In this document: positions 2,599 through 49,588 of the stretch, piece after piece
Position numbering within the stretch: position 1 is the stretch's first letter
How the letters are laid out: each line of letters starts with the position of its first letter
Origin: Mytilus trossulus
Lineage: Eukaryota
Direction: 5' to 3'
Assembly: GCF_036588685.1 (NCBI RefSeq)
Contig: NC_086375.1
Location: forward strand, 69,130,001 to 69,194,000
Length of the DNA stretch: 64,000 bases
Notes under the pieces: generated by a model
Told to the model about the DNA's origin: nothing
Databases searched by the model: none
Seen by the model: the letters and a program-made list of their open reading frames with translations, nothing else
Made by a program: the position numbers and the translations under genes

Positions 2599-3274
2599 AT
2601 GACTATGAAAGATGAAAAAGATTTCGTCGTACTTTTGGAACTTAATAACTCAAGGGTTAAAACAACATCAGAGAAATATGTTTGGGCCGTGTTACTTCTG
2701 GCTGTTGTAATTATTTTATTGGTTTTATCTGTAGGAGGCGTGGTAATATATAAAATTCTACAGGCTGGTTCTGAAAACATCGTTTTAACGAAAGAATTCA
2801 ATATTTCGGTAAGCTAAAACTTTTATACCCGTCCTAAAACATTGATTTCAACCTTCAAATTCGTTTCACTGTGTAGTTGCTTATGATCTTTCTACGTTGT
2901 CACATGAAACAGTAAAACAAATTCAAAGAAAAACATATTTAGTCTGCTCCATGTTCGGGTTGTTGTCGCTTTGACACGTTTCCCATTTCCTTTCTTAATG
3001 TTATAGCAAATCATTATAATTAGAAAGAGGCAAAATAATGACAAAAATAATAATTAAAAAAACGGAGCCCGTCTATCCACAAACCACCTTACATGTACAA
3101 AGAAACATATAATGAATGACAGGAACCTAACAAAATTCATCCAGATTACTCCGTTGCAATTTCTTCCTAGTTTTGTGATTTTACTTTTATATAACAATAT
3201 CGCGATGTTGGTTATTGGTACTCAATTCAATAGTAGATTTCACATTTATATTTCTTTTTTAGAGCATAAACTAA
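2599..3274 (+). CDS. Putative small type II membrane protein 1 (about 73 aa; exons 2599-2808 and 3263-3274)
   Basis: MTMKDEKDFVVLL...EKYVWAVLLLAVVIILLVLSVGGVVIY...FNIS|GTAAG, phase 0; acceptor tttcttttttAG then SIN*. Confidence 0.5.
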
Positions 3275-4309
3275 TGTATCGTTATATGTTGTTACTTGGA
3301 AGAAATGGAAATGTGTAATAATCGTTATATCGAAGGAAAAAAGCTGGTTTATACTGCAGAAAACGAATACCAGTATGAAACAATGACTAAACGTGTGTGT
3401 ATAATTCAGGGAGTGGTGATCGCAGTGCATGATGTTGAGCTGTCCATTATGAAGACTTATTCAAATGTTTTGAACAGTTATATAATTATCGATAAAAAGT
3501 TATAATGTGTTATGCCAGTTATTGATTGTTTTATTGTATTACATATATTCTATTAATTCAATTGTCGTTTAAACTTATTAAAATATTCAGTTGCTCTATC
3601 AAAAAAGTTTTTATAATAATCTAATTATATCATCATAACAGACATGTTTATTACTTGTTTTTTAAATATTTGATTATGTGTTAATTACTGAACATTTAAT
3701 TACTGGATTACGTTTCCGATATAATATTGTTTGTTTATCTCAATTATCCAGTTCAAGGTATACATAGTATAAATACTGATTAATTTACATAGATCGCTTC
3801 CCGTCATGGTTTTTGTCAAGACATAATCATATCATCAGGATAAACGTACCAAATTAATATGAATTTTATATATAATACATATCAAATGTCATCTGTGTAT
3901 TGCACGTTTATAGTTTGTTATTCAATACATTTTCTGTTTACTATTTTGCATAATGTTTCATATATCTTTAAAAATTCAACTTAAGGAGAGAAAAAAGTAT
4001 GACTGTCCTTTGTCACAAAACACACTAAGCATGTATTGCAACATAGTATTACCTGTACCTTTAATTAATTTCAATATAGATTGGTTTAACAACGATAAAT
4101 TTCAAACACTATCTAACTACCTGTGATTAAAATATTTATTTATAGAAAAACGACAGTGAAAATTTTCTTTCTTTTGTAAATAGTTGATAGGTTTCTATTG
4201 ATATATATTATGACACTGTCAGATATAGATTAGATTGTATTCATTCATTTTCAGTAATATATAAGTTGAAAAAAAAGAATGAGAGATATAATAAAGGCAA
4301 CCGTAGTAA

Positions 4310-4731
4310 TAAGGGAAAACGGTAGTATTACATTTTCCTAGCATAAGGTTGGCCTTTTGTGTACCCGACAGGGCGTAGGAAGTCAACTTAAGACCGCTGT
4401 GATTGGATGTACGGGTACAATATATTTTTTATTTATCTATTAATAACTGCAGTGTGAATATTTACAATATTAATTTTAGAACCTATTGAAATATTTCTAG
4501 AAAATTATTCGAAAAGGCTTCCAAAATTTCATAAATTTGGTGTAAAATGACGGTGTGCATGGATAATATAAACCAGCTGCGTTGGAAATTGGTCATGATA
4601 CTATTTGGCTTATATTTCTAAAATAGAATAATAAAGTACTAACCCCACACATAACTGTTTTATCAAGGTTTTAAATTTAGAAAATGTTTGTATCGTCACC
4701 TATGGCATAATAAATAGTATCGTTTTCCCTA
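4310..4731. mobile_element. MITE inserted in a PLE-associated repeat
   Basis: Imperfect TIR AGGGAAAACGGTAGTATT / AATAGTATCGTTTTCCCT; splits the repeat seen uninterrupted near 39868 (aaaggcaacagtagtatac...ctgttc). Confidence 0.65.
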
Positions 4732-5969
4732 GTAAACCGCTGTTCAAAATTCATAAATCGACAGAGAAAAAACAAATCCGGGTTACAAACTAAATCTAAG
4801 GAAAACGTATCAAATATAAAAGAACTACGACAACACCGAAACGTAACACACACAGAAACGAACTATGATGTAACAACGGCCATTTTCCTGACTTGGTAAA
4901 GGGCATATTATTAAAAAAGGTGGGTTGAACCTAGTTTTGTGTCATGCCAAACATCCCGCTTTGATGACAGTGTTAATTATAACATTAAAATGACAACATT
5001 ACACGACAGGGTTACAATAAATAAACAGATAAATGGGGGGAAATATAGGACAGAAAACAAACGAATAATAGCCACCAAAAGGTAACAGGTTAAAATATAT
5101 ATTTTTATACGCCAGACGCGAGCTACGTCCACACAAAACTATGCTTAGTTGTTATAAGTTTGAAAGCCATAACAACTACAAAGTTGAAGATCGCCATGGA
5201 CCAAAAGTTCAAAAAAGTTGTGAGGCAAGGGTTATCCGCCTGGGACAAAAACATCAATATTATCAAGAATTATACATAGTTTTGCAAACACTGAATTTCA
5301 AAAATGACAATATCATAGATATAAATGATTAAACTTAAGTGGTGACTAGCTATCGAATAAAGACGAATACATTACAAAATCCCAGCCCTGTTCGCCATAG
5401 TCAATGCAACGCCCTACGTGACGTCACATTAAAATTTCTAGAACGTGTTCCGAAAATTAAGAAAGAATTGGGATGAAATTCAAGACTAGATTTGAATGAC
5501 TTATCTAACTTATATTAATAACAGTGAAAATTATAATACTAATTAATATTTAAATGTAGTAGTAATTAGATAATTAATTGTATTATTTGGCTTTGTGGGT
5601 GTTTCTTCTGATCAAACTGCAAACCAAATATATAGTGTAAATTTCGTTGATCCAAAATTAAATCTACCAAATGAACTTGATGAGTAATTATCACCAACAC
5701 AACACAAAAAAAACAACAGGAAAAAAATACGATATACAACTACAAACGTGAAGACATTTGACAAAATCCTATGACAAAACAAACACAACATCAAAACCCA
5801 ACAAATTGATTTGGGATGGAAAAGTACCGTGCCACGTCTTAAAGCAATACGAATTAACACTCAGCCAAATATTCATAATCGGGAATAAGTCACGTTCGGT
5901 AATAAAAAGATCAGACGACGTTATGACAAACCACAATCTAACACGTGGTAAAAATGTCCATAGTTAGTT

Positions 5970-8047: not shown

Positions 8048-8260
8048 AATAATAATCAGTGAGGCTCAAATCAAAATATTTATACAGCCAAACAAGTACA
8101 AAGTTGAAGAGCATTGAGGATAAAAAATTCCAGATAGTTTTGTTAACAGGAAATTTATAAAATTTACCACTTTATTGATATTCATGTCAACACAGAAGCG
8201 TTGTCTACCCTCGGGGACGAATTGTCCACCAGCAGTGGCATCGACCCAGTGGTGTAAATA

Positions 8261-12632: not shown

Positions 12633-15600
12633 GTAAAGAAAAAGATACTTATAAACATTTTAAAGGATTCACTGCTTTTTCATACACAGATGTATATTAG
12701 TTCAACAAAAGATACAACCAATATCCTGTACTATTAAATAATTACATTAGATGTTTCATCATAATACGTTATTTTGTTTGGCTATTTGCAATCTTGTGTT
12801 ATTCCTTAGAACTTCATTACACAATAAATTTATCATTCATGATGACACGAGGTCCCATAATAAAGTGCTCAGACAAATTAAATAAAAACTTATTGAATGC
12901 TTCTTTTTGTAACTTCATATGGTTGTAAAATTGTTGGCCGTGCTTACATTTTTAGAATGAAGCGCTTCTACCCTTCCTACGAAATTTACTGCGGTCATCG
13001 CTTTTACACCCCAATGAAAATACAAAAAGAAGCATTCAATTCTTAAGTCATCAACATTAGGGGTGTAAGGAGAAAAAACTTCTTAAAAAAGAATTTCCAT
13101 ACATGCATTATTTCCAACGGAATAGCCTTAATCAGTGGTTGTTGTTGGTTTATGTCTGTCATATTTGTTTTTCATAAATTTATTAAAGAAATAAGGCTAT
13201 TAGTTTTTTCGTTGAATTATTTCCGCTTTTCAATCCGGCTTCTATTATCAATAAAAACTGACCACCACGACATATCACTAGTAGCGTTAAATGCAAATGA
13301 ATCAATCAATAAAAGAAGATTATTGCAATGAACTTCCTTTAAGTCTGCAATGCTGAAAAGACTGAATTTTCATTATTGAAGATGTGCATAGCCTTAGGCG
13401 ACACGGTCGTTTTAGGTCCTCTTTGTTTATTTGGTTAATTTTTGTCACTTACAACCACATATAAGATTTTATTTAAGATAGATATGACCAAAACTGACAA
13501 AATTGATTTATATTTGCCAATAAAATGTAGACTTTACTTCTTTTTTAAACACATTTTATAGCTAGTGCAAAATTCTCTTATTCCACAAAGGATATGAAGA
13601 AGAAGCAGAAACACAAAATCATGTGAACTGAAAAAACTAGATGATATATTTTAGGGCAATTACAATACGACATGTGCCATATGTATAGCAGGATATGCTT
13701 ACATTTCCAGAACACATGAGATCATCCTTAGTTTTAGGTGGGGTACGTTTTGATCAGTCCAATTTTTTACGTTCTGTTTTGTGTACTGTTGTTTTTCTGA
13801 TAGTCTGTTTTGCTTTTTAGCCATGACGTTGTCAGGGTTTTTTTTACTTATGAGTTTGAAAGTCCGGTTGGTATTTTTTGCCTCTCCTGAAATGATTTTT
13901 TTTTATTAAATCAATATATTGTTACAGTATGTTTCACTATTTCAAATTTATTGTTTTAATTTGTATTTTTGTGCTTTTTTATTTTAGGTTATTTTTTCAG
14001 TAGCTTTATCATGTTGGGTGTGGCTAAATCATATGGTTTATTGATGAAGCCACTTATGGATGAGTTTGATGTTGATATCACAATTGCCTCACTTGGAAAT
14101 GCAGTTATGGCTGGAATTTATACATTGGCTGGTATGCTAAAATATATTGACAAAGTGTTGCCAAATTTCATAAGTGTGCTTGTTTCTAGGCCGATCATAT
14201 CTGTATCTTTTGAGTACTTAATAATAATCTACACAACACTGTAGTGTAAAGTAATTTTGAAAATAGAAAATAGAAACAAAATAGAAAAGCTTGTGTTACG
14301 GCCAGAAATCGCCTTTAAATTGTAGCCAACAAAAGACACAAATCAATAGTAAAATTTAACAATATTTATTATACAAAAGTTTACAAGAAGTATTTTACAA
14401 ATATAACTGTTAACTTAACTGTCAAAATATGAGTCCACTCTTTTATCTGTATCCGGAAATCTTTTGGAATCTAATCTGAATATTATGTTCACTACTAAGG
14501 TCACAATCTAGTATGATGTTGTTTGTAGAATAAAAGTGTCAATCCAAATGCTGTGAATACTAATGTCTATCAATGTCTATGTCCAAGTTTAATTATGAGA
14601 GTTTAACTTTAGTGTCTATATATATAGTGTTGTCATGGAAAATTCTGGAATACTCTATAATGGAACATTGTGGAAAATCCTGGAAAGTTACAACGGAAGT
14701 TTCTGGAATAACGTAGAAGTTTAAATTACGCATCTTTTATAAGGATCATTCTAGAAAGTTCCAATCATTCTGTGATTGTTCCAGTGATTCCTAAACTGCA
14801 CAGTTATATAATTATTTGGTAAACAACTATCAGGCCATACAACACAAATTAGGCCAACATAAATAAATACAATAATTACAATATCATAACACCTCCCCCC
14901 TTAAAAGAAGTTTTAGTGTAATAAAAACTTATAATAAATAATATGAACAAAAAAAACATAGTATATACAAAGTGATTTAATAAGCTCTAGATAAAGCATC
15001 TGCTATTACATTATCTTTACCCTTAATATGTTTTACAATTACATCATATTCCTGTAACAATAAACTCCACCTAGTCAACCTCTGATTCTTGTTTCTCATT
15101 TTATGCATGAAGGTGAGAGGATTATGATCAGTATAAACAAGAATAGGATGCACAGTTGGATTCAAATATACATCAAAATGTTGAAGTGCTGACAACATTG
15201 CAAAACACTCTTTTTTCAATAGTTGAATAATTTTTCTGATGTTTATCTAATTTCTTAAAAAAATATGATATAGGTTTTTCAACATGATCATTTGTCTCTT
15301 GATATAAAACAGCTCCTATTCCTACATCGCTTGCATCAACGGCAAGTTTAAATTGTTTTTCAAAGTCTGGAGTAATCAGAACTGGACTATTAATTAAAAG
15401 TGATTTGCTATTTTCAAAAGCGTTTTGACAATTTTCACTCCAGATAAATTTAAAGTCTTTTCGTAAAAGATGAGTCAATGGTTGAACAACAGTAGCAAAA
15501 TTTGAACAAAATTTCCTGTAAAATCCAATCATGCCTAAATATCTCATAAGTTGTTTTCTATTTGTAGGAGGAGGAAATTTGGAAATAGCTCCCACTTTAG

Positions 15601-18600
15601 CCATTATAGGTTTTACTTGACCTTGGCCAACTGTATGCCCTAAATAATCAACAGTGGCCTGAGAAAATTCACTTTTACCAAGATTAACAGTCAAATTTGA
15701 TTTTGACAATCTATCAAAAGTATCATACAAATGTGTTAAATGCTGTTCCCAGCTATCACTACATACAATTAGATCATCAATATAAGCATAACAACAGTCT
15801 AAATCTTTTATAACATTATTGATCATTCTTTGAAATGTAGCTGGAGCACTTTTCATGCCAAACGGCATTACAGTATATTGAAATAAGCCATCTGGTGTAA
15901 CAAAAGCTGATATTTCACGAGCTCTCTGTGTCAATGGAACTTGCCAATAACCTTTCAATAAATCAAATTTACTCACAAATTTTGCTTGACCAATATTGTC
16001 AATACAATCGTCTATCCTTGGAATCGGATATGAATCAGATTTTGAGACTGAATTTACTTTTCTGAAATCAGTCACGAAACGAAAGGTTTTATCTGGTTTT
16101 GGCACAAGGAGACAAGGAGAGCTCCATTCACTGTTACTCGGCTCAATAATATCATTGTCAAGCATATATTTAATTTCTTTTCTCATAACTTCAAGTTTGA
16201 GTGGATTGAGCCAGTAAGGATGTTGCTTAATTGGAGAAGCATCTCCTACATCAACATCATGACAAACAGAAGTGGTTTTGTTTGGCACATCTGGAAAAAG
16301 ATTTTTAAAAGAAAATACCAAAGTTTTTATTTCTTCTCTACGATCAAAAGACAGATGTGCAACTTTTGAGTCTAAATTTGACAAAATTTCTGAATTTTTC
16401 AATCTAACTGTCTCTTCCATAGATTTAGAACTAAAAGGTTGTTCAATTACATCTGGTTTGTCATGATTGTTCTCAAATTGAACCATGCCTAAAGTGGCAA
16501 CTGGTTTACTATCACATACATTAGTACGCTCAAAATATGGTTTTAACATATTAATATGACACACTCTATTTTGTTTGCGCCGACCTGGAGTTTTTACAAT
16601 ATAATTCAAATCATTAATTTTACTCTCTATTGTATAAGGACTACAATATTTAGCCTGTAAAGGATGTCCAGGGACAGGCAGAAATACAAGTACCTTATCA
16701 CCAGGCTCCAAAACTCTGTCCCTGGCATCTTTATCATACCATATTTTCATCTTGTTCTGTACATTTTTTAAGTTTTTCTGAGCAATTTGACAAGCAGTAT
16801 ACAATTTTTCTTTAAATCTAGATACATAGTCTAAAAGATTCAAGTCAGTATGTTCAGTAAGCCACTTTTCCTTAATCAATTTTAACGGTCCCCTTACAGT
16901 ATGACCAAATACCAACTCAAAGGGACTAAATCCAAGGGATTCTTTAACAGCCTCTCGAACCGCAAAAAGTAGAAAGTGAACTCCATCATCCCAGTCTCTG
17001 TCAAATTGAAGACAAAAAGTTCTAATCATGTTCTTCAATGTTTGATGAAAACGTTCTAAGGCACCTTGAGATTCTGGATGATAAGCACTTGATCTGTACT
17101 GAGCAATCCCTAACTGGTATACGACTTGCTGAAATAAACCTGACATGAAATTTGAGCCCTGGTCGGACTGTATAGACTTAGGAAGTCCTACTAATGTGAA
17201 AAATTTGATCAAAGCTTTGACGATAGTAGGTGTCTTGATATTTCTGAGCGGAATAGCTTCAGGAAAGCGGGTAGATGTACACATGATTGTCAATAAATAT
17301 GCATTTCCAGTCTTGGTCTTTGGTAAAGGTCCAACGCAGTCAATTAGAACTCTGCTGAATGGTTCGTCGAAGGCTGGAATAGGCAGAAGTGGTGCTGGTG
17401 GTATTTTCTGGTTAGGCTTACCAACAACCTGGCATATATGGCATGATTTGCAGTATTCTGCGACATCATTTCTAAGTCTTGGCCAATAGAAATGCTGCAA
17501 GATTTTTAGGCAAGTCTTCCTTATACCTAAGTGTCCAGCCAAGGGGGTGTCATGGGCAAGACCAATAATTTCTTGCCTATAAACTTTAGGCACCACCACT
17601 TGGTACACCACTCTCCATTCCTCCTCTGGGGTAGCATCAGGAGGCCTCCACTTCCTCATTAAAATGCCGTCCTGATGGTAATAGCATTCGGCCACTTTGT
17701 CTGCTTCCTCCTGTGGTTGAGCTCTCAGGCTGAGCTGAAGAACCTCAGGGTCTTTATGTTGTTCTTCGAGTAAATTCTTTCGGTCTAATGAATGGCTGTT
17801 TACATCTGACCATGGCATAATAACATTTTTGTTAACACTAGGTGGTTTTATAAGGGCCTTTTCTGAGTTACTAGGATCTTCAATATCAGCTATAAAAGTG
17901 TCAGAAAGGTCCATGTAATCAAACTTGTCTTCTTGCAAATTCTCATTTTGTTGTTTTCTAGCCATCGCCCTAGTAACAACACACGCTGGATACAATTCAG
18001 CATCATCTTCAGGTGATTTAACATCCACCACTGGTTCACTGGTAACAATTGGTTCAGCAACCACTTTGTTCCTAGCTAGATCATTTCCTAGCAATAAGGT
18101 AACACCCTCGACAGGGAGATTAGGACGAACACCTACAACAACTGGTCCAGTTATTAAATCTGACTTCAGATAAATACGATGGAGAGGAACATCTATACAA
18201 CCCAACTCTACACCTTGTAACAAAGCGGAGACACCAACAGAAGTCTTCTCGGACAAAGGCAACACACCTTCTAACAATAAAGACTGAGAAGCTCCAGTGT
18301 CCCGTAAAATCTTAATAGGCTGAAGAGTGGTATCATCAACAATAGAAACAAACCCATCAGACATAAAGGGTTTGTATTCCTCCATGTAATCACAAAAACT
18401 GGACTTAAAAGCCTGACGCGCAGGGCATTCCAATGTACTGGTAATATAAGGTGCCGTACAAGCATTGGTCTTGGGCTTATTATCTCGTTCATTCTTCTTC
18501 TGGAGTCTAAAACAATCAGCCATCAGGTGACCAATCTTCTTACAATAAGCACAAGTCAGTGACTTCTTTTCAAAAGTATCAAATTTTGGACTAGACATAT

Positions 18601-21600
18601 TATAACTGGACTGACTCTTATTCTGTGGAACAGGCTTACTATCAGTACGCTCAGTGCTTTGATTTTTGTAATTTCCACTGGAAGTATTAACATTTTGACC
18701 CTTGAAACTTCTTTTATGTGAAAGAGTATAATTATCTGAAATAACAGCTGCATCATGTATTGACTCAACAGTTTTGTCGTCTAAATGTGTTTTTAAGTCT
18801 AAATGAACACATTGTTTGAACTCTTCTAATAACATCAATTGTCTTAGGTTATCAAAAATTTTATCTGTTTTCTTTGACGTAAGCCATTTATCAAATAGAT
18901 CTTCTTTTTCCCGAGCAAATTCCACATATGTTTGTGAATCAAACTTTTTATAAGATCTAAATTTCTGTCTATATGCTTCTGGTACTAGTTCATAAGCTTT
19001 CAAAACTTCCTGTTTTACCATATCATAATCAGAACTTTTTTCTGATGGAAGTGCGGAATAAATTTCAGCGGCCTTACCCTCAAAAACACTTTGCAGCATC
19101 GTAGTCCAATATGGCTTCGGCCATTTCAAATTATTTGCAATTTTCTCAAACTGTGGAAAATATTTATCAACTGTTTTTTCACAAAATTTCGGAACCAAAC
19201 GTATATTTTTAGCTGCATCAAAATAATCTGATTTCGAGTTAACTTTAGTGTTGCTTTCTTCTTTGACCATTTCAATTTTCAGTTTTTCCATCTCTAACCT
19301 TTCCTTCATTTCAAGTTCTTTTAATTTAAATTCATCTTCTTTTTCTTTTTTATCCATTTCCAATCTTTCCTTCATTTCAAGTTCTTTTATTTTTTCCGTC
19401 TCCTTCATTTCCAGTTCTTTTAATTTAAGTTTATGTTCTAATTCAAGCTGTTTTAATTTAAAGGCGTCAACATTTTCGACCTTAAGATCAAGAGCCTCTT
19501 CACCTAATTTTTCTGATTCAACTAATTTGTCTATAACCAAATTTTTTATAATTTGTTTTCTCATAGATACTTTAAAAACTAATTTCAGATGTTTAGCAAG
19601 CAACACTAATTCCTCTTTCTTTAAATTATCAAAACTCTCCAGGTCTGGCGTTTTCAAAAATTTACCGGCATCAAATGCCATTTTGTAGAATTTTGTTGGC
19701 TAGTTATAATAAAAATATTAAACAAATTTTGATTAAGATATTTTTAAGATCTCCCGGACGAGCCCCCAATTTCTGTTACGGCCAGAAATCGCCTTTAAAT
19801 TGTAGCCAACAAAAGACACAAATCAATAGTAAAATTTAACAATATTTATTATACAAAAGTTTACAAGAAGTATTTTACAAATATAACTGTTAACTAAACT
19901 GTCAAAATATGAGTCCACTCTTTTATCTGTATCCGGAAATCTTTTGGAATCCAATCTGAATATTATGTTCACTACTAAGGTCACAATCTAGTATGATGTT
20001 GTTTGTAGAATAAAAGTGTCAATCCAAATGCTGTGAATACTAATGTCTATCAATGTCTATGTCCAAGTTTAATTATGAGAGTTTAACTTTAGTGTCTATA
20101 TATATAGTGTTGTCATGGAAAATTCTGGAACACTCTATAATGGAACATTGTGGAAAATCCTGGAAAGTTACAACGGAAGTTTCTGGAATAACGTAGAAGT
20201 TTAAATTACGCATCTTTTATAAGGATCATTCTAGAAAGTTCCAATCATTCTGTGATTGTTCCAGTGATTCCTAAACTGCACAGTTATATAATTATTTGGT
20301 AAACAACTATCAGGCCATACAACACAAATTAGGCCAACATAAATAAATACAATAATTACAATATCATAACACTTGATGTATCTAAGTCTTTTAATTGAAC
20401 CATATAATTAATTTTCCTGTCATAAGGTACATATCTTGTATATAATGGTATACTTATGTTTTTTTTATTTGAATCTCCTTGTTAGTGAAATTATTAAAAA
20501 ACGTAGAAGTCTCAGGCTACCTGGGATTCATGTAACTTGGTTAAAAATAAAATAAAACTACCAGTACAAATTAAAATTTGATCTTTCATGCTATAAAATG
20601 GTATTCACTTTGGAATCCATTACTCATCAATTTTCTGTTTTATTAATGCTATAGTAGGAATATAATTTATGAAAATAGCGCACACAGTTCAACTTGTTTT
20701 TTTTTTACAAAGGCCTTGTTAATTAAGAAAAAAAATGTGTACAAGTGTTTGTTTATAAACTCCAGATAGAAAAATCTGTATTTAAGATGATAATGATAAT
20801 AGTATAAAAATGTTTGTTTAATTATATGGCAATTTAAACCTTTCGGAACCCATTGTATGAAAAAAAAATATTCAACGTTTGGTTGCAGTTTATCTCAGAT
20901 GATGATTGGAATAATTTAAGGGTCATAACCTTAATCGGCTCACTGGATGATTTAAACTATGCTAACAGGTGTAAATGAACTTTTCGGAACGTGGAAGGCA
21001 ATCAAAGAGGGTTTTGGTTTATTTTTCTTATCATAAGAGAAACAGATTTTTACATAGGTACACGTGGATTATCGGATTTATCCAATCTCGATACTTAAAC
21101 TATAAATCATAACGTTATCGACGAGACTCGGATTTTAAAATAGAGAATTTAACTATCTCAATTGGATAAATCTGATAATCCTCTGGTTTCAATATCACTG
21201 GGGTAAAGCTGATGACCGTTACTGCATTCACGGTCATCTCACATATGTCATATGAAAAATTAGGTCAGTATTTGTTTTGTCTGTTTCGGTGTTTTTATAT
21301 CATTTTCTTTACGAGCATACATTGTTACAATGGAAATTCATAAAAGATTTACACTAAAATCGCAAATATCTACCGAGAAATATGTATGAAACTGGAAATT
21401 GTATTTGAAAAAATCGCTAAGATGACCGTAAATTATAATCGAGATGACCGTGACAGGATCATCGAATCATAACAAGGGTGACCGTAATTGGTTAAAAGAT
21501 TACCGCAATTTGTAAAGGATGACCGTAACTTTTAAAGGATGTCTGTCTATTCTAAGAAATATCCATAATTGTATTCATAGCTTTTTGTTGAGTTTGTCTC

Positions 21601-32565: not shown

Positions 32566-33490
32566 ATGAGGCGAAGATTGTCAACCAGTTTTTCTGTTGA
32601 TGACAGTGAACCTATTCTAAATGATCATATAGTTGAAAGTGATGACGATCTCGTATTATTGTCAAAATCGACTAAAGATACTGACAACGAAGAACAAATT
32701 GATTCAGTGGAAGTTCACCCTGATGTTGCATTAACCATTGAACCTACAAGTGTGCAAAGTTTCGTTTCCAAGGAATTGTTCAGAAAAAAATCATTTTGGA
32801 TTATAATTGCATCAAGTGTTGGAATACTCATAATTTTCTCATTGCTTATACATAAAATATTAACTAGTATTCAAGATACAGAGATTGGTTTAAAGGTAAT
32901 TATAATTAAGAAACAATATCTCCATGGCGTTACGATATGCAACTGAAAGTTGTTTTCTAATTGAACATCATCGAAACTTGACTATAGTTTACATAAGCGG
33001 TCCACGTTGGTTTGTCTGCGAATGTCGTTTCTTTGTTATGGACTGAAGAGATTGTTAATCAAAGTAATGAAATGGTATATTTTAACGATATATGTATGTT
33101 TAACAACCTTCGAATATTATATATGTTTATCATTACAAAAATAGTTTGAAACATTTTGATATAGGGAGACAATAATTGAAGAAAAAATAGAAATAGATCT
33201 ACTACTTTAAGCAAATACGTCAAAAGGTTTCTACCTTAAGCATAAATCTTATGAGCACATCTTATTTTGTAGGAAATCGGAATGTGAGTGATTTGATCAT
33301 AAATTTTATATCTAACTACTGATTAATGGCACTGTGCACTAAATGTCACCCAAATAACACCAAATGTATTTATAACATATTTGGTGTAATCAAACATTGT
33401 TTTACGTTCATATTCTAGTAAACTATGACTTGCATTCATTTATTATTTCAGTCAAACGCAACTGAAACCAATTTATCCTTGAAGCTATAA
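32566..33490 (+). CDS. Putative small type II membrane protein 2 (about 122 aa; exons 32566-32895 and 33452-33490)
   Basis: Acidic tail (DDSEPIL, DDDLVLL), RKK before TM FWIIIASSVGILIIFSLLI, AAG|GTAAT phase 0, exon 2 SNATETNLSLKL*. Confidence 0.62.
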
Positions 33491-36074
33491 GGTATGAAAC
33501 GTGTTTTTTTCTTTTCTTTGAAGATATCGAGTACTAGTATGTCTTATAACATTAAAAACCTTCTACTGTATATTGCACAATATACATTTTTATCAAACGA
33601 CAAAATAACGTCACCAATGTTACTACACATAAAGTGGATATACCTGTTTATAGAACTTCCTAATGAAATGAAATGAAATGAAAAGAAAATGCTTGAAATA
33701 ATTTTGTCTATTTATTCACAAATCTAATATAATGTATTGCTAATTCATATGTCTTTTAAAGCTTTGGTTAATACTGAATATTAAGTGTCGATCTTTACTT
33801 AACTTTTTTAATTAGCAGATAATTTGCGTGAATGATTGAGGAGTTAATATTGCAAAACTTAAATACAAAAAAAAAAACAAGAACTCCGAAGCAATTTGAA
33901 ATTGGAAAGTTTCTTCTCAAATGGCAAAATCAAAAGCTCAAACAAATCAAACGCATTGAACAAAAGTGTCATCTTCCGGATTTGGTACAGACATTTCTTT
34001 ATGTAAAGACAGAATATTTAACCTGGTTATATAGCTGGTTAATCCTCTCACGTGAATGACACTTGCATAAAATTCCATTATATTGATAACGATGTGTGGG
34101 CAAAATAATTCGACATAACAGGTAAAAATGTCGAAATAGGAAATAAATCGAAAAAGGAATACTGCAGTCAACATTGTGTTATAATCCTAATCACTATAAA
34201 AACAAGCAAATATGCCGGAAACATAGTTAATAAGAAAGCATGTAGACAAATTTCCAATATACTGTATATGTTCAGATGTTTAATTTCGATGCACGACATA
34301 CTTATTTGACTTCTAGCTCGATAATATCCTATTTATTAGACAATCCCCCAAACAAAACGTGTGAATACATAACATTTTATCATTTATGTCATACATTTTA
34401 GTTGAAAGAAAGATAACTCTGATGTTTCTGGGGTTTATTATCAAAAAAGAGTGGGCTTAAAAGTGGTGGGACAAAGTTCTAAATTGCAATTATTTACAAC
34501 GTGTATCTACGGTTTTTTTTTATTTAAATATAGTTTTACATGCACATTGCCCTCGTCGCTCATAATATTACTGTACATAATTCACCTTTTTATATACAAA
34601 TTGTACTATATGTTATGGGCGACAAAGGCAGTGTGCTTGTTAAACTATATTTATGTATCCACGTCGTAGCATAATGTATTTCAATTTCTTTTCTTGGGTG
34701 TTTTAATCTATTTACGTTGGTCTTAATTAAGGCAACCGTATCTAATGAATTGAGACTGCGAGCACATGCTGCTAGTCAGTTAATATGCCTAGATGTATCG
34801 TATCGGTGACTTGTGTAGCTTCTATTTCAGTTTGTTGTGATCATAAAACTGTCGGAGCAGTTCTTGTAAGGGTACACACTTGGGAAGACCTCTTGTTTCG
34901 GTAATATCCGAACGACTATAAGAATGACTTTGATTATTTTGCTCAGTGGCAGATCCAGAAATTTTCGCAAGAGGAGGCAAACTGAATACCTAAGAGGGGG
35001 CCGCTCCTGTTGGTAGTACGGTGGTTGGCGTGTGTCTTTATTTCGATATCATTTTTTAATTCATTCAATATTCGATTCAATAAGAGTATACGTAAATTTC
35101 TATTATCGTTTCAGTGACCCAGCACACGTCAAAGCAAGAAACAGAAGTGTAAATTAATATCTCTGTATTCATCTTTATGAGAAATCAAATCTTCAAAGTA
35201 TAATAGTAAATTTATCTTCAATTCATTGAACTTCAAGTCGCGGAATGGGCGATATTGCGGTCATTATTTTTGCAGCAGCCTTCTAGGGAACAGATGATAG
35301 GGAACTGAACTTCGCTGATAAAAAACAAAGGCATCAAAGAAATTACATTTTATCACTTGCAGAATAATGCACATGTATTAAAAATCTAAAATCAATCATT
35401 TTTCCTTATTATTTCTTTTATCTGACTGATGTGAATAACACTTTTTTATGGAACGTTTGAAAATTGTGAAAATGTCAAATTGCACTTTTTAAATCAAGTT
35501 CATGAGAAAGATGATTTTTTAAGAAAAGTTCTTATGATTTAGTTCGTTTCAATTTTATCAGAGTAAAGATTGAAAAGTCAGAAAATTTCTTATTTATTCC
35601 GAACTCTGTATCGCAAAAAGCTTATATGATATAAAAACTTAGGAAATTTTTAAAATCAGTTGACTGGTCTTGCTGATCTGATGTTAATATCATATGTCAA
35701 TATCATAATCATGAAATCAAACTGTTTTCAAATTCATTTCAAAGTTTGGTTTGAGTCAATGTCATTGATTGTGTTAATCGTAAGTATATACAGTTACCTT
35801 TACCCCTATAACCTCAATATCTGTAGTTAAAACTCGGTTAATGTATCTTCCCTTCTGTACCTCATAACATATTTGTCACCTGAGTAATGTGTATTACCTG
35901 TAGTAATTGTAACCCCTCCAAGCATATACATGAATATTTTGTAAACACCTGAATGAATATCATACAGAATTGTAAAATATTTTAGGCGGACATTCTGAAA
36001 TACATTGATATTTTTCACTGAGACATATTTACTGTTTTACGTTTATACAAAAGACGAGCGGAATAATAATTACG

Positions 36075-36251
36075 ATGGAATCTAAGCATAATACACTGCA
36101 GAGAGGGATCAATAATATAAGAAAGACAGCGAAAGAACAAGCACAGTGTTTTTCTAAGATGTCGTCCCGTAAGAAGAAGACATTGGTAGCTGTTGTAGCA
36201 ATTGTTGGATCATGTATAATAATACCGTCTTTAATTGACAGCTTCAGATGA
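36075..36251 (+). CDS. Putative small membrane protein 3 (58 aa; possibly frameshifted relative to a second exon at 36817-36855)
   Basis: MESKHNTLQRG...RKKKTLVAVVAIVGSCIIIPSLIDSFR*; GTAAGT donor at 36263; below the ORF-track length cut-off. Confidence 0.4.
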   Translation: MESKHNTLQRGINNIRKTAKEQAQCFSKMSSRKKKTLVAVVAIVGSCIIIPSLIDSFR

Positions 36252-44440: not shown

Positions 44441-45540
44441 ACAAGAGTGCACACACTGAAATGTCTCGCCTTCTTTATTAATCATTGATATTATGTTGAT
44501 AGTCCTAAATATAAAGCTTTATTAAAACTGTCACATAAACTTAACATGAACCAAGATAACTAAACATATACCAATGAACCATGAAAATGAGGTCAAGGTC
44601 AGATGAACCATGCCAGGCAGACATGAACATCTAACAATTCTTCCATACATCAAATACAGTTGACCTATTGCTTATAGTTTAAGAAAAACAAACCAAAACA
44701 TAAAAAGTCAACACTGAGCAATGGATTGTGAAAATTAGGTCAAGGTCAAATAAAGACTGCGCTACTGACATATAGATCATAAAATATTTCCATACACCAA
44801 ATATAGTTGATTAATGGCATATAGTATCAGAGAAAAACACCAAATCTGAAAAACTTTACTTTGACCACTGAACCATGAAAATGAGGTCAAGGTCAGATGG
44901 CATCTGCCCACTAGACATGCACACCTTTCAATCATTCCATACAACAATTATAGCAGACCTATTGCATAAAGTATGAGAAAAACAGACCAAAACACAAAAA
45001 TCTAACTGTAACCACTGAACCATGAAAATGAGGTCAAGGTCAGATGACACCTGCCAGTTGGACATGTACAGCTTACAGCCCTTCCATACACCGAATATAC
45101 TAGACCTACTGCTTATAGTATCTCAGATATGGACTTGACCACCAAAACTTAACCTTGTTCACTGATCCATGAAATGAGGTCGAGGTCAAGTGAAAACTGT
45201 CTGACGGGCATGAGGACCTTGCAAGGAAGGCACATACCAAATATAGTTATCCTATTACTTATAATAAGAGAGAATTTAACATTACAAAAAAGTTGAACTT
45301 TTTTTTCAATCAATCACTGAACTATGAAAATGAGGTCAAGGACATTGGACATGTGACTGACGGAAACTTCGTAACATGGGGCCTCTATATACAAAGTATG
45401 AAGTATTCAGGTCTTCTACCTTATAAAATATAAAGCTTTAAAGAAGTTAGCTAACGCCACCGCCGCCGTAGCCGCCGCCGTAGCCGGATCACTATCCCTA
45501 AGTCGAGCTTTCTGCAACAAAAGTTGCAGGCTCGACAAAA
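44441..45540. mobile_element. Helentron-associated (HINE-like) element with central ~147-bp tandem array
   Basis: GGTC(A/G)AGG anchors at 44591, 44738, 44885, 45032, 45178, 45334; GCC microsatellite about 45456-45485; terminal hairpin GTCGAGC..CTGCAAC AAAA GTTGCAG GCTCGAC then AAAA. Confidence 0.8.
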
Positions 45541-46205
45541 ACCAGTGATTTTACTAAATTCTGTCCAAAAAAGTTTCAAAATCATATTTTTTCCATTTTT
45601 ACACTGTGAGACATGAATCAACACTGACAAAGATGATCATATTTGTTTATGAGATTTTGAATATTAATTATTTGCCAAATAGAGCTCATCAGCTGCATTC
45701 TTACGTATCACTCACGGTGATTTGAGGAAGAATGAGCATTGATTACAACATGTACAACGATTCTGCACCGTGGTTCATTTCATACAATTTATTCTTTATT
45801 TTTCAACGTCGAATCAATACCAAGACAATGAAATAATTGAAGACCAGATGTGATTTTATTTATGTAAATTATATACATTAACATATGTCGCTATCTCTAT
45901 ATATAGGTTATATTCATGTCCAATGGTTGGTATGATTAAAATTTTAAATAAGAATGGATTTGCATTGAATTGAATAGGACTCGTACACTAGTGTTATTAG
46001 ATATAGGAGCCGTTTAAGTACCGGTATATTTATATTCAAAACTTTGTAAAGGTTTGATCCAAATCAAGCTACCGACTACCTTTTACTTTTCTGGCCTCTT
46101 TAAATGCTAGAAAAATTTAATCGGTGTCAAAAATTGGAATTATTTATTGTCCATGTTGTAAAGCGTCTGTTTACATTGACCAGGAAATAGACCTATAAAC
46201 GTAAA

Positions 46206-46517
46206 ATGTCTGGTAGCGAATGTTTAGCCACCCAAGAGGAGTGCTTAGATGAACCTGAAGCAGACGACCGGACGTTAATGATTCCATTTGAGAATGACCA
46301 AGTGTTACAAGAGCAAAGCCACGCAAATTTGGAGCGTGACGACCACGAAACAATATTAAATTATGTATTCAAGGATAAAAGCAAATGGAAAGTTCTAAAA
46401 TGCGGCGCACAAAAGACGAGGCTACTATTACTTGTAACTTTAATATGTGTTTTTTGTGTATTGCTGATATTATCTGTGATGGCTTTGATTAAAGTGAAGT
46501 CCGCATTGTCGAGCTAA
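46206..46517 (+). CDS. Putative small tail-anchored/type II membrane protein 4 (103 aa)
   Basis: Acidic N-terminus (DDRTLM, ENDQVL, DHETIL), KTR before TM LLLLVTLICVFCVLLILSVMALI. Confidence 0.6.
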   Translation: MSGSECLATQEECLDEPEADDRTLMIPFENDQVLQEQSHANLERDDHETILNYVFKDKSKWKVLKCGAQKTRLLLLVTLICVFCVLLILSVMALIKVKSALSS

Positions 46518-48322
46518 AGGATTATGTAAAGCTAGTACGTTAGGTACGTATGATTGGCGAGTTACAAATGTATGTACCATACTACATTTAACAATTGTAC
46601 ACTAGAACATACAGTTGTGATAATTAACTGGTTTAAAGTGTCAAGAAATCCATTGAAATTCTATCAAATGTATAAAAAAAAAAAAAAAACAACAACAACA
46701 ACAAAGGATTGGAATTTGCTTTAAGCAAGCAGATTGGTCAATGTTTCCAACGTTTTAAACTAAATATCCACTAAGATGGTTTTTTTTTCTCTCTGATATA
46801 GTTCAGATTCACTGCAATGATATTCTCCTGTGAACGTTGAACTACTGAATTATTTATGAACTGAACTTCACATTTTTTTATTCTCATTCTTGACTACCTT
46901 CAAATATACATGTATGTAAAATATGTAAAGATCTATTTTAAAGCGACAGGATCAATATTAAAACATCTAAATGACACTATTGATAGACAAATATACTTTG
47001 GAGTATACATCTGAAATTGAATACATATCTTTCAAACATAGGTATATCTACATATATACTTTATTCTGATAAACCGATGACCATCATGTAGATACAAAGG
47101 TACACAGTAGAGCATAGACATTTTACAATAATATTAAAGTACATGTTGAGGAAATATATAATAGTACAAGGTTCGTATGTTGAGGAAATAAACAATACAA
47201 CAGAGATACATAAATATGTGTACATGTTTATAAAAATGTGCAGTGTATATTAAATAGAAGACCTTAAACAGGAGGAACGAGGGAGAATCCACTTATTCGT
47301 TTATAACTCTAAAAGGCTTACACAAACGTCTAAGCTTAAATTGTTTAGATGTATACATAATTTTCATGAACATTTTTAGTGAGATTTTGTCCTTTTCTTT
47401 CTGTTGAAAAAAAGTTGCATTTGAGGAGGCAATGTCTTTCAAAAGCAAATTGTATATTTTCGACCCAGATATCTTTCGAGTCGATTAAAAAGGGGGGGAA
47501 ACGTTTAAGTTTTATTTCATTTTATTTTTGAACTGACTGGAAAGAGTACACAACCTTTTAAAATGCATGGATTTTTGTACTATTTAGGATAATATTTCAA
47601 GGCATTTGGGCCTTCTATTATGTAAACAACTAGAATTTTAAGCCTATTTGAAAGAAATGGCATACGTCTCTACAAGCTTAACTTTCAGCAGCAATTTTTG
47701 TAGGGGTCTCATCTAACAATCAAATGTATTTATAAAATTAAAAACATGATAATGAAATATTTGGCATAAATAATCAATATCTGATAATTGTTGATACAAA
47801 AAATGGGGCTAAAGATACCAGAAAGACATTCAAGTTCACAGATTGAAACAAACCGACAAACCATTCCTTAAAAAAAAACAGATAAATAAAAGTACACAAG
47901 AAACAACATATATAAAAACTAAAACAACACGAACCCCATCAAAATCTTGGGGTGGTGTCGGGTGGTACGGAAGGGTAGGTAGATCCTGCTACACATGTGG
48001 TACCCGTCGTGTTGTACAAATGACTTTTTCTACTCAGAATGATTTTACAGCTTGTTACAAAATACAAAATGCTGTACATAAATCCGAGTAAAAATGTTGT
48101 TAAGTATCAAAGACTACCAAAGAATTACCATTCATGCCAAATATTTCATTCACATGTTTTTAAAATTGAGTTGCTTTTTCGTTGACATACATCACGCATC
48201 GTATTTTATTCATTCCATACAAACGTTGAAAAATAAAACTGATGTGTAAAAACAAAATAAAATGAGTGCACAATTCCATTTTCATCCTCTCAGAGAATAT
48301 CATGAATATTGTACATATGCTA

Positions 48323-48417
48323 CACAGGCACTTGTCTCAGATTTTCCCCTTATATATACATTGATATAATATCGGTTATATAAATGTATATAGGGGGATC
48401 TGAGACAAGTACCTGTG
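48323..48417. repeat. 95-bp fold-back element (mini-MITE)
   Basis: CACAGGCACTTGTCTCAGAT ... ATCTGAGACAAGTACCTGTG; flanks ATATGCTA / GTATGCTA. Confidence 0.7.
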
Positions 48418-48743
48418 GTATGCTATGCACAGTTCGTCATAGTCTTATTTTAGCTCTTAATTTGAATGAAAGTTGAATACAAATACATTATTTATGAAGT
48501 AGCTACACAATACAAACATGACAAGATCGATAGAGATATAAACTGTTGACGGGTATCGAAAAACCTATAAAGTGTGCATTGTACTATCATGTGCACTTTG
48601 AATAGAATAAATAACCATGAAAAACGTTGTGCGATTTAAACTTGAATTATATACACAGTCAAATCCGACTCACTATCATGATTGATTGTGTATCTAAAAG
48701 TGAATTTTAAAAATATGCAAACATATAAAAGTGAATATATAAC

Positions 48744-49588
48744 ATGACAGAACGTGTTCAATATAGAAGTGTATCACAAGAGGATACTGGTGTATCACAA
48801 GAAGATACAGATGACGAACTTCTAGGGGACCATAAAGTGACGAACGGAAGTACAGTAACAATATTAGGGGGTGATGAGACAGGGACTGTATCAGGAAGTA
48901 ATGTTCGTTTGACTGAAGCTAGTTCTTCATATAGTAATCACAAGAGAATCCAGGAATGTATTTGTAAACCAAAGAACAGGAAAATTGCAATAGGAATTCT
49001 GATATGTACATTCGTTATTATTGTTCTCATTTTATTGGGTGTTGGATTAAGTAATATAAATCTTAAGCATTCTGTTCATGATCCGGATAAGCATTCAAAG
49101 GTTTGTTTTTTTATTCTTTATTTGATAATCAAAGTAAATGTCTGAACTCGCAGTGATAGCCTGCTATCAGTACATATCACCATTATGTCACAAAGGACAT
49201 AAGCAGCGATAGCCTGCTATCAGTACATATTACTTATTAACATGTCACCAAGGACTTACTAGTCAGTGTAAAATCTAAAAGAACAAGTAAAGTACACTTT
49301 AAAAGCCATGCAAGCAGTATACATGTCTAAGGCGGGTCTAATTAAGGCCTGAAATATCAAGTTTAAATTAAAGTTACAGTGACCAAACAAGACAATGACT
49401 AACAAGTACTATTTGTTACAGAGTATCTTAATATAATTATATCAATGTGCCTAGCAACTTCAAACTATAGAACTTTGCTTATTCAGGAAGATCAAGTATA
49501 ACAAAGTGTAATATGTTTACCTTTGTTTATTACTGCAATATAATGTCATTATTTTCTCTTTCAGACTAAAGTTTCTAGCAATGGTTGA
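48744..49588 (+). CDS. Putative small type II membrane protein 5 (about 126 aa; exons 48744-49100 and 49565-49588)
   Basis: YRSV, DTDDELL, KPKNRK before TM IAIGILICTFVIIVLILLGVGL, AAG|GTTTGT phase 0, acceptor ttttctctttcAG then TKVSSNG*. Confidence 0.65.

What the first reader, a model, noticed from the sequence alone, without database searches (positions are those of the whole stretch)
2599..49588. Cluster of five orphan small type II membrane proteins with acidic-dileucine sorting signals and shared gene architecture
Seen: five + strand ORFs (2599, 32566, 36075, 46206, 48744), each with no signal peptide, a polar N-terminus, basic residues just before one ~20-aa hydrophobic helix, and a very short C-tail. 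Three (2599, 32566, 48744) have a phase-0 GT donor 15-17 codons after the helix and a terminal exon of 3-12 codons; the other two have a donor just after the stop. Four carry [DE]xxxL[LIM]-like or DxxLL motifs (DFVVLL; DSEPIL, DDLVLL; DDRTLM, DHETIL; DTDDELL) and 48744 also has YRSV. Established: these motifs bind AP-1/2/3 or GGA adaptors, and the positive-inside rule gives N-in topology. Inference: a tandemly duplicated, highly diverged family of endosomal/lysosomal or secretory-granule microproteins or cargo adaptors, flanking an MCT gene. Since MCTs need single-pass partners, a link is conceivable but speculative. I recognise no known family.
Basis: partly seen in the sequence, partly recalled or inferred. 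Interest (0 to 1): 0.8.

Follow-up and report, generated by a model that had tools for sequence, protein, structure and literature searches.

The report
Mussel array of tail-anchored membrane microprotein genes
This stretch of the Mytilus trossulus genome holds a real, mussel-only array of small genes for single-helix membrane proteins of unknown function; two of them use alternative first exons of one gene and share a last exon, but they are not a demonstrable sequence family.

Summary
The five ORFs are real and far beyond chance. A topology filter finds 4 on the + strand, 0 on the - strand and 0.06 per shuffle. All five have intact ORF orthologues in other mussel data. Two are annotated: the 126-aa M. 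trossulus LOC134712244, and two M. galloprovincialis and one M. edulis model.

Assembled RNA-like contigs confirm the splice 49100|49565. They also show that the 46206 exon joins the same acceptor. So 46206 and 48744 are alternative first exons of one transcription unit with a shared terminal exon (49565 to about 49825, AATAAA at 49804).

The array is larger than reported. Three more members lie on the + strand within 17.6 kb upstream of the window.

Every product has its helix within about 26 residues of the C-terminus, which is tail-anchored topology. The N-termini are predicted disordered.

Homology is shown only between 32566 and one upstream copy. Profile comparisons of the other groups find nothing, and Pfam finds nothing.

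Acidic-dileucine motifs are enriched in the five (shuffle P about 2e-4) and kept in three orthologue sets. One is lost in M. galloprovincialis, and the three new members have none.

Sorting function and any MCT link remain untested. An unchecked scan note reports a similar array elsewhere in this genome.

The parts
2599..2808 (+). Member D, coding exon: 70 codons with an N-terminal D-F-V-V-L-L motif and one helix, ending at a phase-0 donor TCG|GTAAGC. The second ATG at 2605 is the one kept in orthologues.
   Evidence: Orthologues P0016/P0019/P0020 are 61-65% identical with the ORF intact. Single copy in its own genome. No RNA evidence was obtained.
3263..3274 (+). Predicted 3-codon end of member D, after a strong polypyrimidine-AG acceptor. 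Unverified.
   Evidence: Sequence only. No junction evidence.
32566..32895 (+). Member E, coding exon 1: 110 codons ending at a phase-0 donor AAG|GTAATT.
   Evidence: Orthologues are VDI80849.1 (88% identity) and a Logan ORF (89%). A paralogue lies 36 kb upstream.
33452..33491 (+). Member E, exon 2: 12 codons with an N-x-T sequon, then the stop at 33488-33490. A possible further donor G|GTATGA follows immediately.
   Evidence: Sequence. The M. galloprovincialis model has a homologous 12-codon end with the N-x-T sequon kept. Use of the second donor was not tested.
36075..36251 (+). Member F: a 58-aa ORF with a basic N-terminus, the helix 4 residues from the C-terminus, and a donor ACA|GTAAGT at 36262|36263, 11 nt after the stop.
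   Evidence: Orthologues include 58-aa ORFs (P0021, seen on 17 contigs; P0023) and P0018/P0022, at 59-60% identity. The juxtamembrane basic stretch, most of the helix and the tail residues P-S-L-I-D-S are invariant. No RNA evidence.
45986..46543 (+). Member G, alternative first exon 1a. The CDS is 46206-46517 (103 aa) and the stop lies 26 nt before the donor TAG|GTACGT at 46543.
   Evidence: Contigs X3 record 21 (45986-46543), X1 record 3 and X5 record 27. Joints 46541->49563 (cut +2), GT..AG, in X1 and to the same exon in X3. Eight Logan orthologue ORFs are 89-92% identical.
48566..49100 (+). Member H, alternative first exon 1b. The 5' end is approximate (contigs start at 48566 to 48673). The CDS runs from 48744 for 119 codons to a phase-0 donor AAG|GTTTGT.
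   Evidence: X5 record 28 and X3 record 22. Joint 49098->49563 (cut +2), GT..AG, skipping 464 nt, in X1 (2 contigs) and X5 (side 150). XP_063429661.1 is 100% identical.
49565..49825 (+). Terminal exon shared by G and H. It supplies the last 7 codons plus the stop (49565-49588) for H and only 3' UTR for G. AATAAA lies at 49804-49809. The 3' end is approximate.
   Evidence: X1 record 7 covers 49565-49785. Joints from both first exons reach it. Sequence.

Best explanation
The finding is part of an array of at least eight mussel-restricted genes. All lie on the + strand within about 67 kb of M. trossulus chromosome piece C3, around an MFS/MCT-like gene. Each encodes a small (58-220 aa) tail-anchored single-pass membrane protein.

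**Protein layout.** The N-terminal domain is disordered and in most members acidic (F's is basic). Basic residues precede one very hydrophobic helix. Only 4-26 residues follow the helix.

**Gene layout.** Nearly the whole ORF sits in one exon. An intron follows at a phase-0 site 15-20 codons after the helix, or just after the stop.

**Members G (46206) and H (48744).** These are shown to be alternative first exons of one transcription unit (LOC134712244). Both splice to one terminal exon. That exon gives H its last 7 residues and gives G only a 3' UTR.

**Inferred mechanism.** The helix is too close to the C-terminus to leave the ribosome before termination. The proteins would therefore be inserted post-translationally (a GET/TRC40-type route) into the ER membrane, N-terminus in the cytosol. 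There the fast-evolving disordered domain would display short linear motifs, including acidic dileucine-like ones in some members. Their most likely role is as small trafficking or regulatory adaptors of the secretory/endocytic system.

**What is shown and what is inferred.**
- Shown: the ORFs, the clustering, the orthologues, two splice patterns and the shared exon.
- Inferred: translation, orientation, insertion route and motif function.

**Confidence by part.** About 0.8 that these are real protein-coding tail-anchored microprotein genes, about 0.9 for the shared exon of G and H, and about 0.25 for the adaptor or sorting role. The overall figure is a compromise.
For: - The ORFs and their topology features.
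- Enrichment and strand bias: 4 against 0.06 in shuffles, and 0 on the - strand or in 138 kb of flanks.
- Extra members A, B and C upstream, with the same AAG|GT phase-0 donor in B and C.
- E and C are paralogues with a conserved juxtamembrane block.
- All five have intact orthologue ORFs, including RefSeq models in M. trossulus and M. edulis and GenBank models in M. galloprovincialis. All indels seen are in frame.
- GT..AG joints 49100|49565 and 46543|49565 occur in contigs from three studies. There is no depth in the introns.
- AATAAA lies in the shared exon.
- AlphaFold2 models: residues 1-44 (G) and 1-74 (H) have low confidence, and only the helix is confident.
- No Pfam family reaches its cut-off.
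- The D[FC]VVLL, DDRTLM, DHETIL and DDELL motifs are invariant in the orthologues seen.
- Motif enrichment by shuffling: P(at least 4 of 5) = 2e-4.
Against: - There is no protein-level evidence of translation.
- The runs are only guessed to be RNA, although intron-skipping contigs argue that they are.
- Only one 6 kb stretch could be laid, so D, E and F have no RNA evidence here.
- Amino-acid divergence between congeners is high: 9-22% for E, G and H against M. edulis/galloprovincialis-type sequences, and about 40% for D and F against the representatives found.
- Most listed nucleotide differences in H are nonsynonymous, so constraint on sequence is weak. dN/dS could not be computed.
- Orthologue ORFs come from protein databases, which favours intact frames.
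- Motif support is uneven. One motif of E is lost in M. galloprovincialis. F has none. A, B and C have none by eye.
- Common ancestry of the members is not demonstrable.
Confidence: 0.6

Rival explanations
1. The five are one tandemly duplicated, highly diverged homologous family whose [DE]xxxL[LIM]/DxxLL/YxxO motifs bind AP-1/2/3 or GGA adaptors. That would make them endosomal, lysosomal or granule cargo adaptors, possibly partners of the neighbouring MCT.
For: - Same strand, tight cluster and a shared exon layout.
- E and C prove that duplication occurs here.
- Motifs are enriched against shuffles and invariant in the orthologues of D, G and H.
- An exact 12-mer lies just upstream of the ATG of both E and G, with a 2-mismatch copy before H.
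- Long helices of 22-24 residues in D, G and H fit post-Golgi membranes (own knowledge of helix-length trends).
Against: - No detectable similarity between groups by BLASTP, Smith-Waterman z-scores, hhalign or blastn. A profile of the E family finds only E and C in the genome.
- DDLVLL and DSEPIL are not kept in M. galloprovincialis.
- F and the new members A, B and C lack canonical motifs.
- MCT link: no Ig domain and no acidic residue in any helix. Nothing resembles basigin or embigin, and SLC3A2_N was not matched by Pfam. The Atlas lead at 0.81 is at chance level.
Confidence: 0.25
2. The transcripts are non-coding or translationally irrelevant, as young proto-genes would be. The ORFs persist only because the species compared are close and because AT-rich exons readily give hydrophobic ORFs.
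For: - Fast amino-acid divergence, and mostly nonsynonymous differences listed for H.
- GC3 is as low as in the surrounding DNA for D, E and H.
- No homologue outside mussel-like data and no domain.
Against: - Shuffles give 0.06 such ORFs against 4-6 observed, all on one strand.
- E and C keep open frames and a conserved juxtamembrane block at 34% identity.
- D and F keep intact ORFs at about 60% identity, with helix and flanks most conserved.
- All indels seen are multiples of three, with the ascertainment caveat noted above.
- Stops lie less than 50 nt before the last junction, as expected for translated mRNAs that avoid nonsense-mediated decay (sequence).
Confidence: 0.12
3. Each ORF is merely the first exon of a longer type II membrane protein gene whose ectodomain exons lie further downstream.
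For: Donors follow each ORF. For D, E and F the downstream partner exon is not verified in M. trossulus.
Against: - G and H splice to a short exon that carries AATAAA. Contigs stop there (X1 record 7 at 49785, X3 record 23 at 49734, X5 record 28 at 49712), about 20-90 nt before AATAAA at 49804-49809, and none extends past it.
- RefSeq and GenBank models of the H and E orthologues are 120-127 aa.
- G and F end at a stop before the donor.
Confidence: 0.03

Closest known systems
Uncharacterised mussel proteins XP_063429661.1 (M. trossulus LOC134712244), XP_071163939.1 (M. edulis), VDI80852.1 and VDI80849.1 (M. galloprovincialis)
   Same: XP_063429661.1 is the H product itself (100% identity, 126 aa). 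XP_071163939.1 and VDI80852.1 are H orthologues, and VDI80849.1 is the E orthologue.
   Different: All are unnamed predictions. None describes the array, the tail-anchored topology or the shared terminal exon. The exact 103-aa G sequence and the 58-aa F sequence were not in the collection searched. D and E could be looked up only as their intron read-through ORFs, which were also absent; their spliced products were not searched.
Tail-anchored membrane proteins as a class (for example cytochrome b5, SNAREs, phospholamban/sarcolipin-type micropeptides)
   Same: No signal peptide, a cytosolic N-terminal domain, and a single helix within about 30 residues of the C-terminus. This implies post-translational insertion. 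The small size resembles the micropeptide regulators.
   Different: There is no sequence relation to any of them (Pfam blank). The N-terminal domains are disordered and, in most members, acidic rather than folded or SNARE-like. The insertion route and the organelle are untested.
Loci with alternative first exons joined to common downstream exons (GNAS/NESP55, CDKN2A, clustered protocadherins, UGT1A)
   Same: Two different first exons, each holding a different ORF, splice to the same acceptor. As with NESP55 (own knowledge), the whole G ORF lies in its first exon, and the shared exon is 3' UTR for it.
   Different: Only two first exons are shown. The constant part encodes 7 residues or none, so it adds no shared protein domain. 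Separate promoters are inferred, not shown.
Type II cargo with acidic dileucine signals (for example invariant chain CD74; the I-L variant known from VMAT2; own knowledge)
   Same: An N-in single-pass protein with [DE]xxxL[LIM]- or DxxLL-like strings in the cytosolic domain, more than 20 residues from the membrane.
   Different: There is no ectodomain. The motifs are only partly conserved and are absent from several members. No binding or localisation data exist.
MCT ancillary proteins basigin/embigin
   Same: Single-pass membrane proteins, and here they are genomic neighbours of an MFS/MCT-like gene.
   Different: Basigin and embigin are type I Ig-superfamily proteins with a charged residue in the helix (own knowledge). 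These proteins have opposite topology, no Ig domain and no charged residue in the helix.

Membership tests
Tail-anchored (TA) membrane proteins (topological class) | A single hydrophobic helix, with no more than about 30-40 residues between its end and the C-terminus | tested here: met
   The C-side of the best 19-residue window is 4 aa (F) and 12 aa (G). To the donor it is 15-20 aa, plus 3-12 terminal-exon codons, for D, E and H. By eye, the residues after the full helix number about 22, 26, 4, 8 and 24.
Tail-anchored (TA) membrane proteins (topological class) | No N-terminal signal peptide, and an N-terminal domain that is cytosolic | tested here: inconclusive
   The N-termini are polar, with mean hydropathy -0.3 to -1.5. 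Each has 3-6 Lys/Arg in the 15 residues before the helix against 1-3 after it (by eye). No dedicated signal-peptide or topology predictor was available, and there is no experiment.
Tail-anchored (TA) membrane proteins (topological class) | Post-translational insertion by GET/TRC40, EMC or SND | not testable with these tools
   Needs in vitro insertion or knock-down assays.
Cargo with acidic dileucine / DxxLL sorting signals | A [DE]xxxL[LIM] or DxxLL string in the cytosolic domain | tested here: met
   Present in D, E, G and H. The chance of at least one per protein is 0.06-0.23, and P(at least 4 of 5) = 2e-4 by shuffling. Absent from F and, by eye, from the extra members A, B and C.
Cargo with acidic dileucine / DxxLL sorting signals | The motif is conserved in orthologues | tested here: inconclusive
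   Kept in D (D-C-V-V-L-L), in G (both motifs invariant in 9 sequences) and in H (4 sequences). Lost or weakened in E in M. galloprovincialis.
Cargo with acidic dileucine / DxxLL sorting signals | Binding to AP-1/2/3 or GGA, and motif-dependent localisation | not testable with these tools
   Needs pull-downs and LL>AA mutants.
Variable-first-exon locus (GNAS / protocadherin / UGT1A type) | Two or more first exons spliced to one common downstream exon | tested here: met
   Joints 46543|49565 (X1, X3) and 49100|49565 (X1, X5), both GT..AG. Shown for G and H only.
Variable-first-exon locus (GNAS / protocadherin / UGT1A type) | Each first exon has its own promoter, and more members use the constant exon | not tested
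   The single read-laying run covered 45200-51199 only. The donors after D, E exon 2, F, B and C could not be followed.
One homologous protein family comprising all five ORFs | Detectable sequence or profile similarity between members | tested here: not met
   BLASTP and Smith-Waterman similarity is confined to the helix, with z no higher than 3.6. hhalign probabilities are 0.5-4%. The E-family profile finds only E and C in the genome. There is no DNA similarity. Only E/C are paralogous (34% identity).
MCT ancillary proteins (basigin/embigin) or SLC3A2 N-terminal region | Ig domains and type I topology with a charged residue in the helix, or a match to PF16028 | tested here: not met
   No Pfam match at E up to 1. 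No Asp or Glu in any helix (sequences). The Atlas look-alike scores 0.81, which is chance level.

The most novel reading that the evidence does not exclude
The whole + strand array (A to H) is a variable-first-exon system. Many promoter-plus-exon units would each encode a different tail-anchored microprotein with its own cytosolic motif platform. They would be spliced to a few shared terminal exons that supply little more than the 3' UTR and poly(A) site. One locus would then yield a fast-evolving repertoire of unrelated-looking membrane adaptors. Only the G/H pair is shown to work this way. The matching phase-0 AAG|GT donors of B, C, E and H, and the post-stop donors of E exon 2 and F, are compatible with it.
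Probability: 0.15. Interest if true: 0.65.

Novelty: new variant of a known kind. Interest (0 to 1): 0.4.

Why it matters
Bivalve genomes are full of unnamed, lineage-restricted genes, and small membrane proteins are routinely missed or mis-modelled.

This locus gives a concrete, testable case. It holds eight same-strand genes for tail-anchored microproteins that diverge beyond recognition yet keep their topology and exon layout. Two unrelated-looking proteins are made from one gene by first-exon choice.

It could serve as a model for three questions:
- how microprotein genes are born and diversify (duplication of promoter plus first exon, with a shared 3' exon);
- how annotation pipelines should treat them — no annotated protein matching the 103-aa isoform was found;
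- whether short sorting motifs in disordered tails are maintained by selection.

No function is known, so the present value is descriptive.

Tried and rejected
**Similarity among the five**
- Pairwise and profile homology found nothing beyond helix composition.
- blastn of all exons against 204 kb around the locus found no duplicated DNA.

**Family and look-alike searches**
- Pfam on all members gave only sub-threshold helix-driven matches.
- The ESM Atlas had a best score of 0.82 for P0003, which is chance level. The SLC3A2_N lead is not backed by Pfam. The Atlas could not take the 46206 protein.
- The whole-library HMMER search used a deliberately mixed two-sequence profile of 2599 and 36075. 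It found their orthologues but no distant relatives. Two long repetitive hits, P0015 and P0017, were ignored.
- Three literature searches found nothing on these proteins.

**Steps that were blocked or left out**
No orthologous DNA could be fetched, so dN/dS was not computed. The partial difference list is too incomplete for it.
I stopped that step. Statements on A-C motifs are by eye only.
Exons were searched separately.

**Rejected readings**
- First exons of longer receptor genes.
- Chance ORFs.
- MCT ancillary subunits.


Full report
**Source and context**

The window is Mytilus trossulus, G000:C3:69130001-69194000. It is AT-rich, with about 30% G+C. The features that frame the finding are:
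- An MFS/MCT-like gene on the + strand. Its exons lie at about 12.5, 14.0, 22.0 and 26.3-27.3 kb. PF07690 matches at E = 4.7e-22.
- A 1502-aa retrotransposon ORF on the - strand, inside an intron of that gene.
- A thioredoxin-domain gene on the - strand at 56-64 kb.

**The observation**

All five ORFs exist as described. Each has these properties (basic residues counted by eye):
- one strongly hydrophobic 19-residue window (Kyte-Doolittle 2.56-3.29);
- a polar N-terminus of 31-80 residues (only mildly polar in D, mean hydropathy -0.31);
- 3-6 basic residues just before the helix;
- a short C-side.

- Phase-0 donors at 2808, 32895 and 49100.
- Acceptors at 3263, 33452 and 49565, giving 3, 12 and 7 codons.
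- Donors 11 nt after the stop of 36075 and 26 nt after the stop of 46206.

**Is it more than chance?**

I applied a simple classifier: an ATG ORF of at least 58 aa, one strong helix, a polar N-terminus of at least 25 aa and a C-side of at most 35 aa.
- It finds 4 ORFs on the + strand of the window and none on the - strand. Block shuffles give a mean of 0.06.
- I then fetched 100 kb upstream and 40 kb downstream. Over these 204 kb and both strands, every hit lies on the + strand between -17.6 kb and +49.1 kb.

This search uncovered three further members outside the window:

| Member | Position on C3 | Features |
|---|---|---|
| A | 69112434-69113093 | 220 aa; helix 13 residues from the end |
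| B | 69124399-69124761 | Starts M-R-R-R like E; donor AAG\|GTTAGT in phase 0 |
| C | 69126186-69126557 | Donor AAG\|GTATGA in phase 0 |

The array therefore has at least eight members.

**Are they genes?**

All five have intact orthologue ORFs.

| Member | Orthologues found |
|---|---|
| H | Identical to exon 1 of XP_063429661.1, "uncharacterized protein LOC134712244" of M. trossulus (126 aa = 119 + the 7 codons at 49565). Orthologues XP_071163939.1 (M. edulis, 127 aa) and VDI80852.1 (M. galloprovincialis, 120 aa). |
| E | VDI80849.1 (122 aa, 88% identity). Its last 12 residues correspond to the predicted exon at 33452, with the N-x-T sequon kept. |
| G | Eight Logan-derived 103/104-aa ORFs, 89-92% identical. 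|
| D | 87-aa ORFs, 61-65% identical. |
| F | 58-aa ORFs, 59-60% identical. The basic juxtamembrane stretch, most of the helix and the tail residues P-S-L-I-D-S are invariant. |

D and F were found with a two-sequence profile in the whole-library HMMER search. VDI80849.1 and VDI80852.1 lie on the same 205,670-nt contig.

All indels seen between orthologues are in frame. Protein databases favour intact frames, so this counts for little on its own.

The strongest sign of protein-level constraint is the E/C pair. These are two open frames in the same genome, found by six-frame search. They are 34% identical, and a block just after the helix is conserved.

**RNA evidence**

I laid four runs from four studies on 45200-51199. 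The runs are Logan contigs that are only guessed to be RNA. They behave as RNA: depth sits on the exons, is zero in 46600-47599 and 49200-49399, and contigs skip introns at GT..AG.

There are two results.
1. The X5 contig is 558 nt, with 150 nt beyond the joint.
2. The G exon (45986-46543) is joined from the donor at 46543 to the same acceptor, 49565. This is seen in X1 at depths of 54 and 71, higher than for the H junction. It is also seen in X3, where a diverged copy of the first 19 letters of the exon lies between the two sides. A second X1 joint, placed 3-5 nt upstream, has non-canonical ends. I take it to be an alignment or allele variant.

The shared exon runs from 49565 to at least 49785 and carries AATAAA at 49804-49809.

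G and H are therefore alternative first exons of one transcription unit. The shared exon encodes the last 7 residues of H. For G it is pure 3' UTR, and the G stop lies 26 nt before the junction. That is within the distance that avoids nonsense-mediated decay (established rule, own knowledge). The exact 103-aa G product was not in the protein collection, so this isoform appears not to be annotated as a protein.

**Structure and family**

- AlphaFold2 models show no folded domain. In G, residues 1-44 are below pLDDT 50, and helices span 45-55 and 58-102. In H, residues 1-74 are low, and a helix spans 79-111.
- Pfam gives nothing above its cut-offs for any member, including A and B.
- The Atlas look-alikes of H score 0.82 or less, which is chance level.
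- Similarity among the five is confined to the helix.
- hhalign between the E, G and H orthologue alignments, and of B against the E profile, gives probabilities of 0.5-4%. Only the first 13 residues of B resemble E.
- The E profile finds only E and C in the genome.
- There is no DNA similarity between members.

"Family" is thus supported by position, strand, topology and exon layout. Sequence supports it only for E/C.

One small extra hint: the 12-mer ACCTATAAACGT occurs exactly twice in the window, 44 nt and 15 nt before the ATG of E and G. A 2-mismatch copy lies 23 nt before the ATG of H. I estimate the chance of such a shared 12-mer at a few per cent, and the estimate is post hoc.

**Topology**

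In every member the helix ends 4-26 residues before the C-terminus. By the usual definition (own knowledge) these are tail-anchored proteins. The helix cannot emerge from the ribosome before termination, so insertion should be post-translational. The very hydrophobic, long helices (22-24 residues in D, G and H) would fit the ER-to-post-Golgi route. That is inference only.

**Motifs**

- Composition-preserving shuffles of the five N-termini give 0.06-0.23 per protein for at least one canonical acidic-dileucine or DxxLL string. The probability of at least four of five is 2e-4.
- The motifs of D, G and H are invariant in the orthologues seen.
- In E, DDLVLL is DDLIVW in both orthologues, and DSEPIL is DSEPIV in one.
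- F has none.
- By eye, A, B and C have none.
- YRSV in H is not unusual: the shuffle probability is 0.31.

The sorting-signal idea remains a reasonable hypothesis for some members. It is not a property of the array.

**The MCT link**

Nothing supports it beyond adjacency. There is no Ig domain, no charged residue in any helix and no Pfam match.

**Evolutionary rate**

Amino-acid divergence from M. edulis/galloprovincialis-type sequences is 9% (G), 11-12% (E) and 13-22% (H). Most listed nucleotide differences in H change the residue. Sequence constraint is weak outside the helix and a few motifs.

**Verdict**

What is there is a mussel-restricted array of genes for tail-anchored microproteins. 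It includes one locus that makes two unrelated-looking proteins by first-exon choice. Function is unknown. The best guess is small cytosol-facing motif platforms in the secretory/endocytic membrane system.

An unchecked note of this scan (s1-826626) reports a similar array of tiny single-pass proteins elsewhere in this genome. I did not test it.

Spliced (joined) models were not searched.

Noticed in passing
G000:C3:69112434-69113093, 69124399-69124761 and 69126186-69126557 (L022:2434-3093, L023:4399-4761, L009:1501-1872): Three more + strand ORFs with the same topology lie 3.8-17.6 kb upstream of the window (220, 121 and 124 codons). Two end at phase-0 AAG|GT donors. One is a clear paralogue of the 32566 ORF.
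   Followed up: partly
window 32522-32533, 46191-46202, 48721-48732: The 12-mer ACCTATAAACGT occurs exactly twice in the window, 44 nt and 15 nt before the start codons of the 32566 and 46206 ORFs. A 2-mismatch copy lies 23 nt before the 48744 start. It lies inside the transcribed 5' UTR of 46206. It may be a remnant of common origin or a shared cis element.
   Followed up: partly
window 49581-49709: The shared terminal exon holds a 42-codon ATG ORF in another frame, overlapping the end of the 48744 CDS. It has no hydrophobic stretch. It may be chance.
   Followed up: no
window 15173-19681 (- strand): An uninterrupted 1502-aa gag-pol ORF of an LTR-type retrotransposon lies inside an intron of the MFS/MCT-like gene. 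By eye, the integrase motifs lie before the reverse-transcriptase YxDD motif. A further 80-aa ORF (14977-15219) continues it in another frame. I only observed this.
   Followed up: no
window 45200-45600, 47800-48000, 50400-51199: Contig depth in all four runs is very high (hundreds to about 21,000), with 5-15% differences and many loose ends. These are expressed repeat families, not part of the genes. The 50.8-51.2 kb block could instead be the 3' end of the - strand thioredoxin-domain gene.
   Followed up: no
window 27779-27822: Another note of this scan (s1-827226) reports a hammerhead ribozyme antisense in an MCT intron. I did not examine it.
   Followed up: no
M. galloprovincialis accessions VDI80849.1 to VDI80852.1 (same 205,670-nt contig): The orthologues of the 32566 and 48744 ORFs are three accession numbers apart. 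The two models between them may be the orthologues of 36075 and 46206. This could not be checked.
   Followed up: no
window 32540-32548: A two-codon upstream ORF (ATG ATA TAA) lies 26 nt before the start codon of the 32566 ORF.
   Followed up: no
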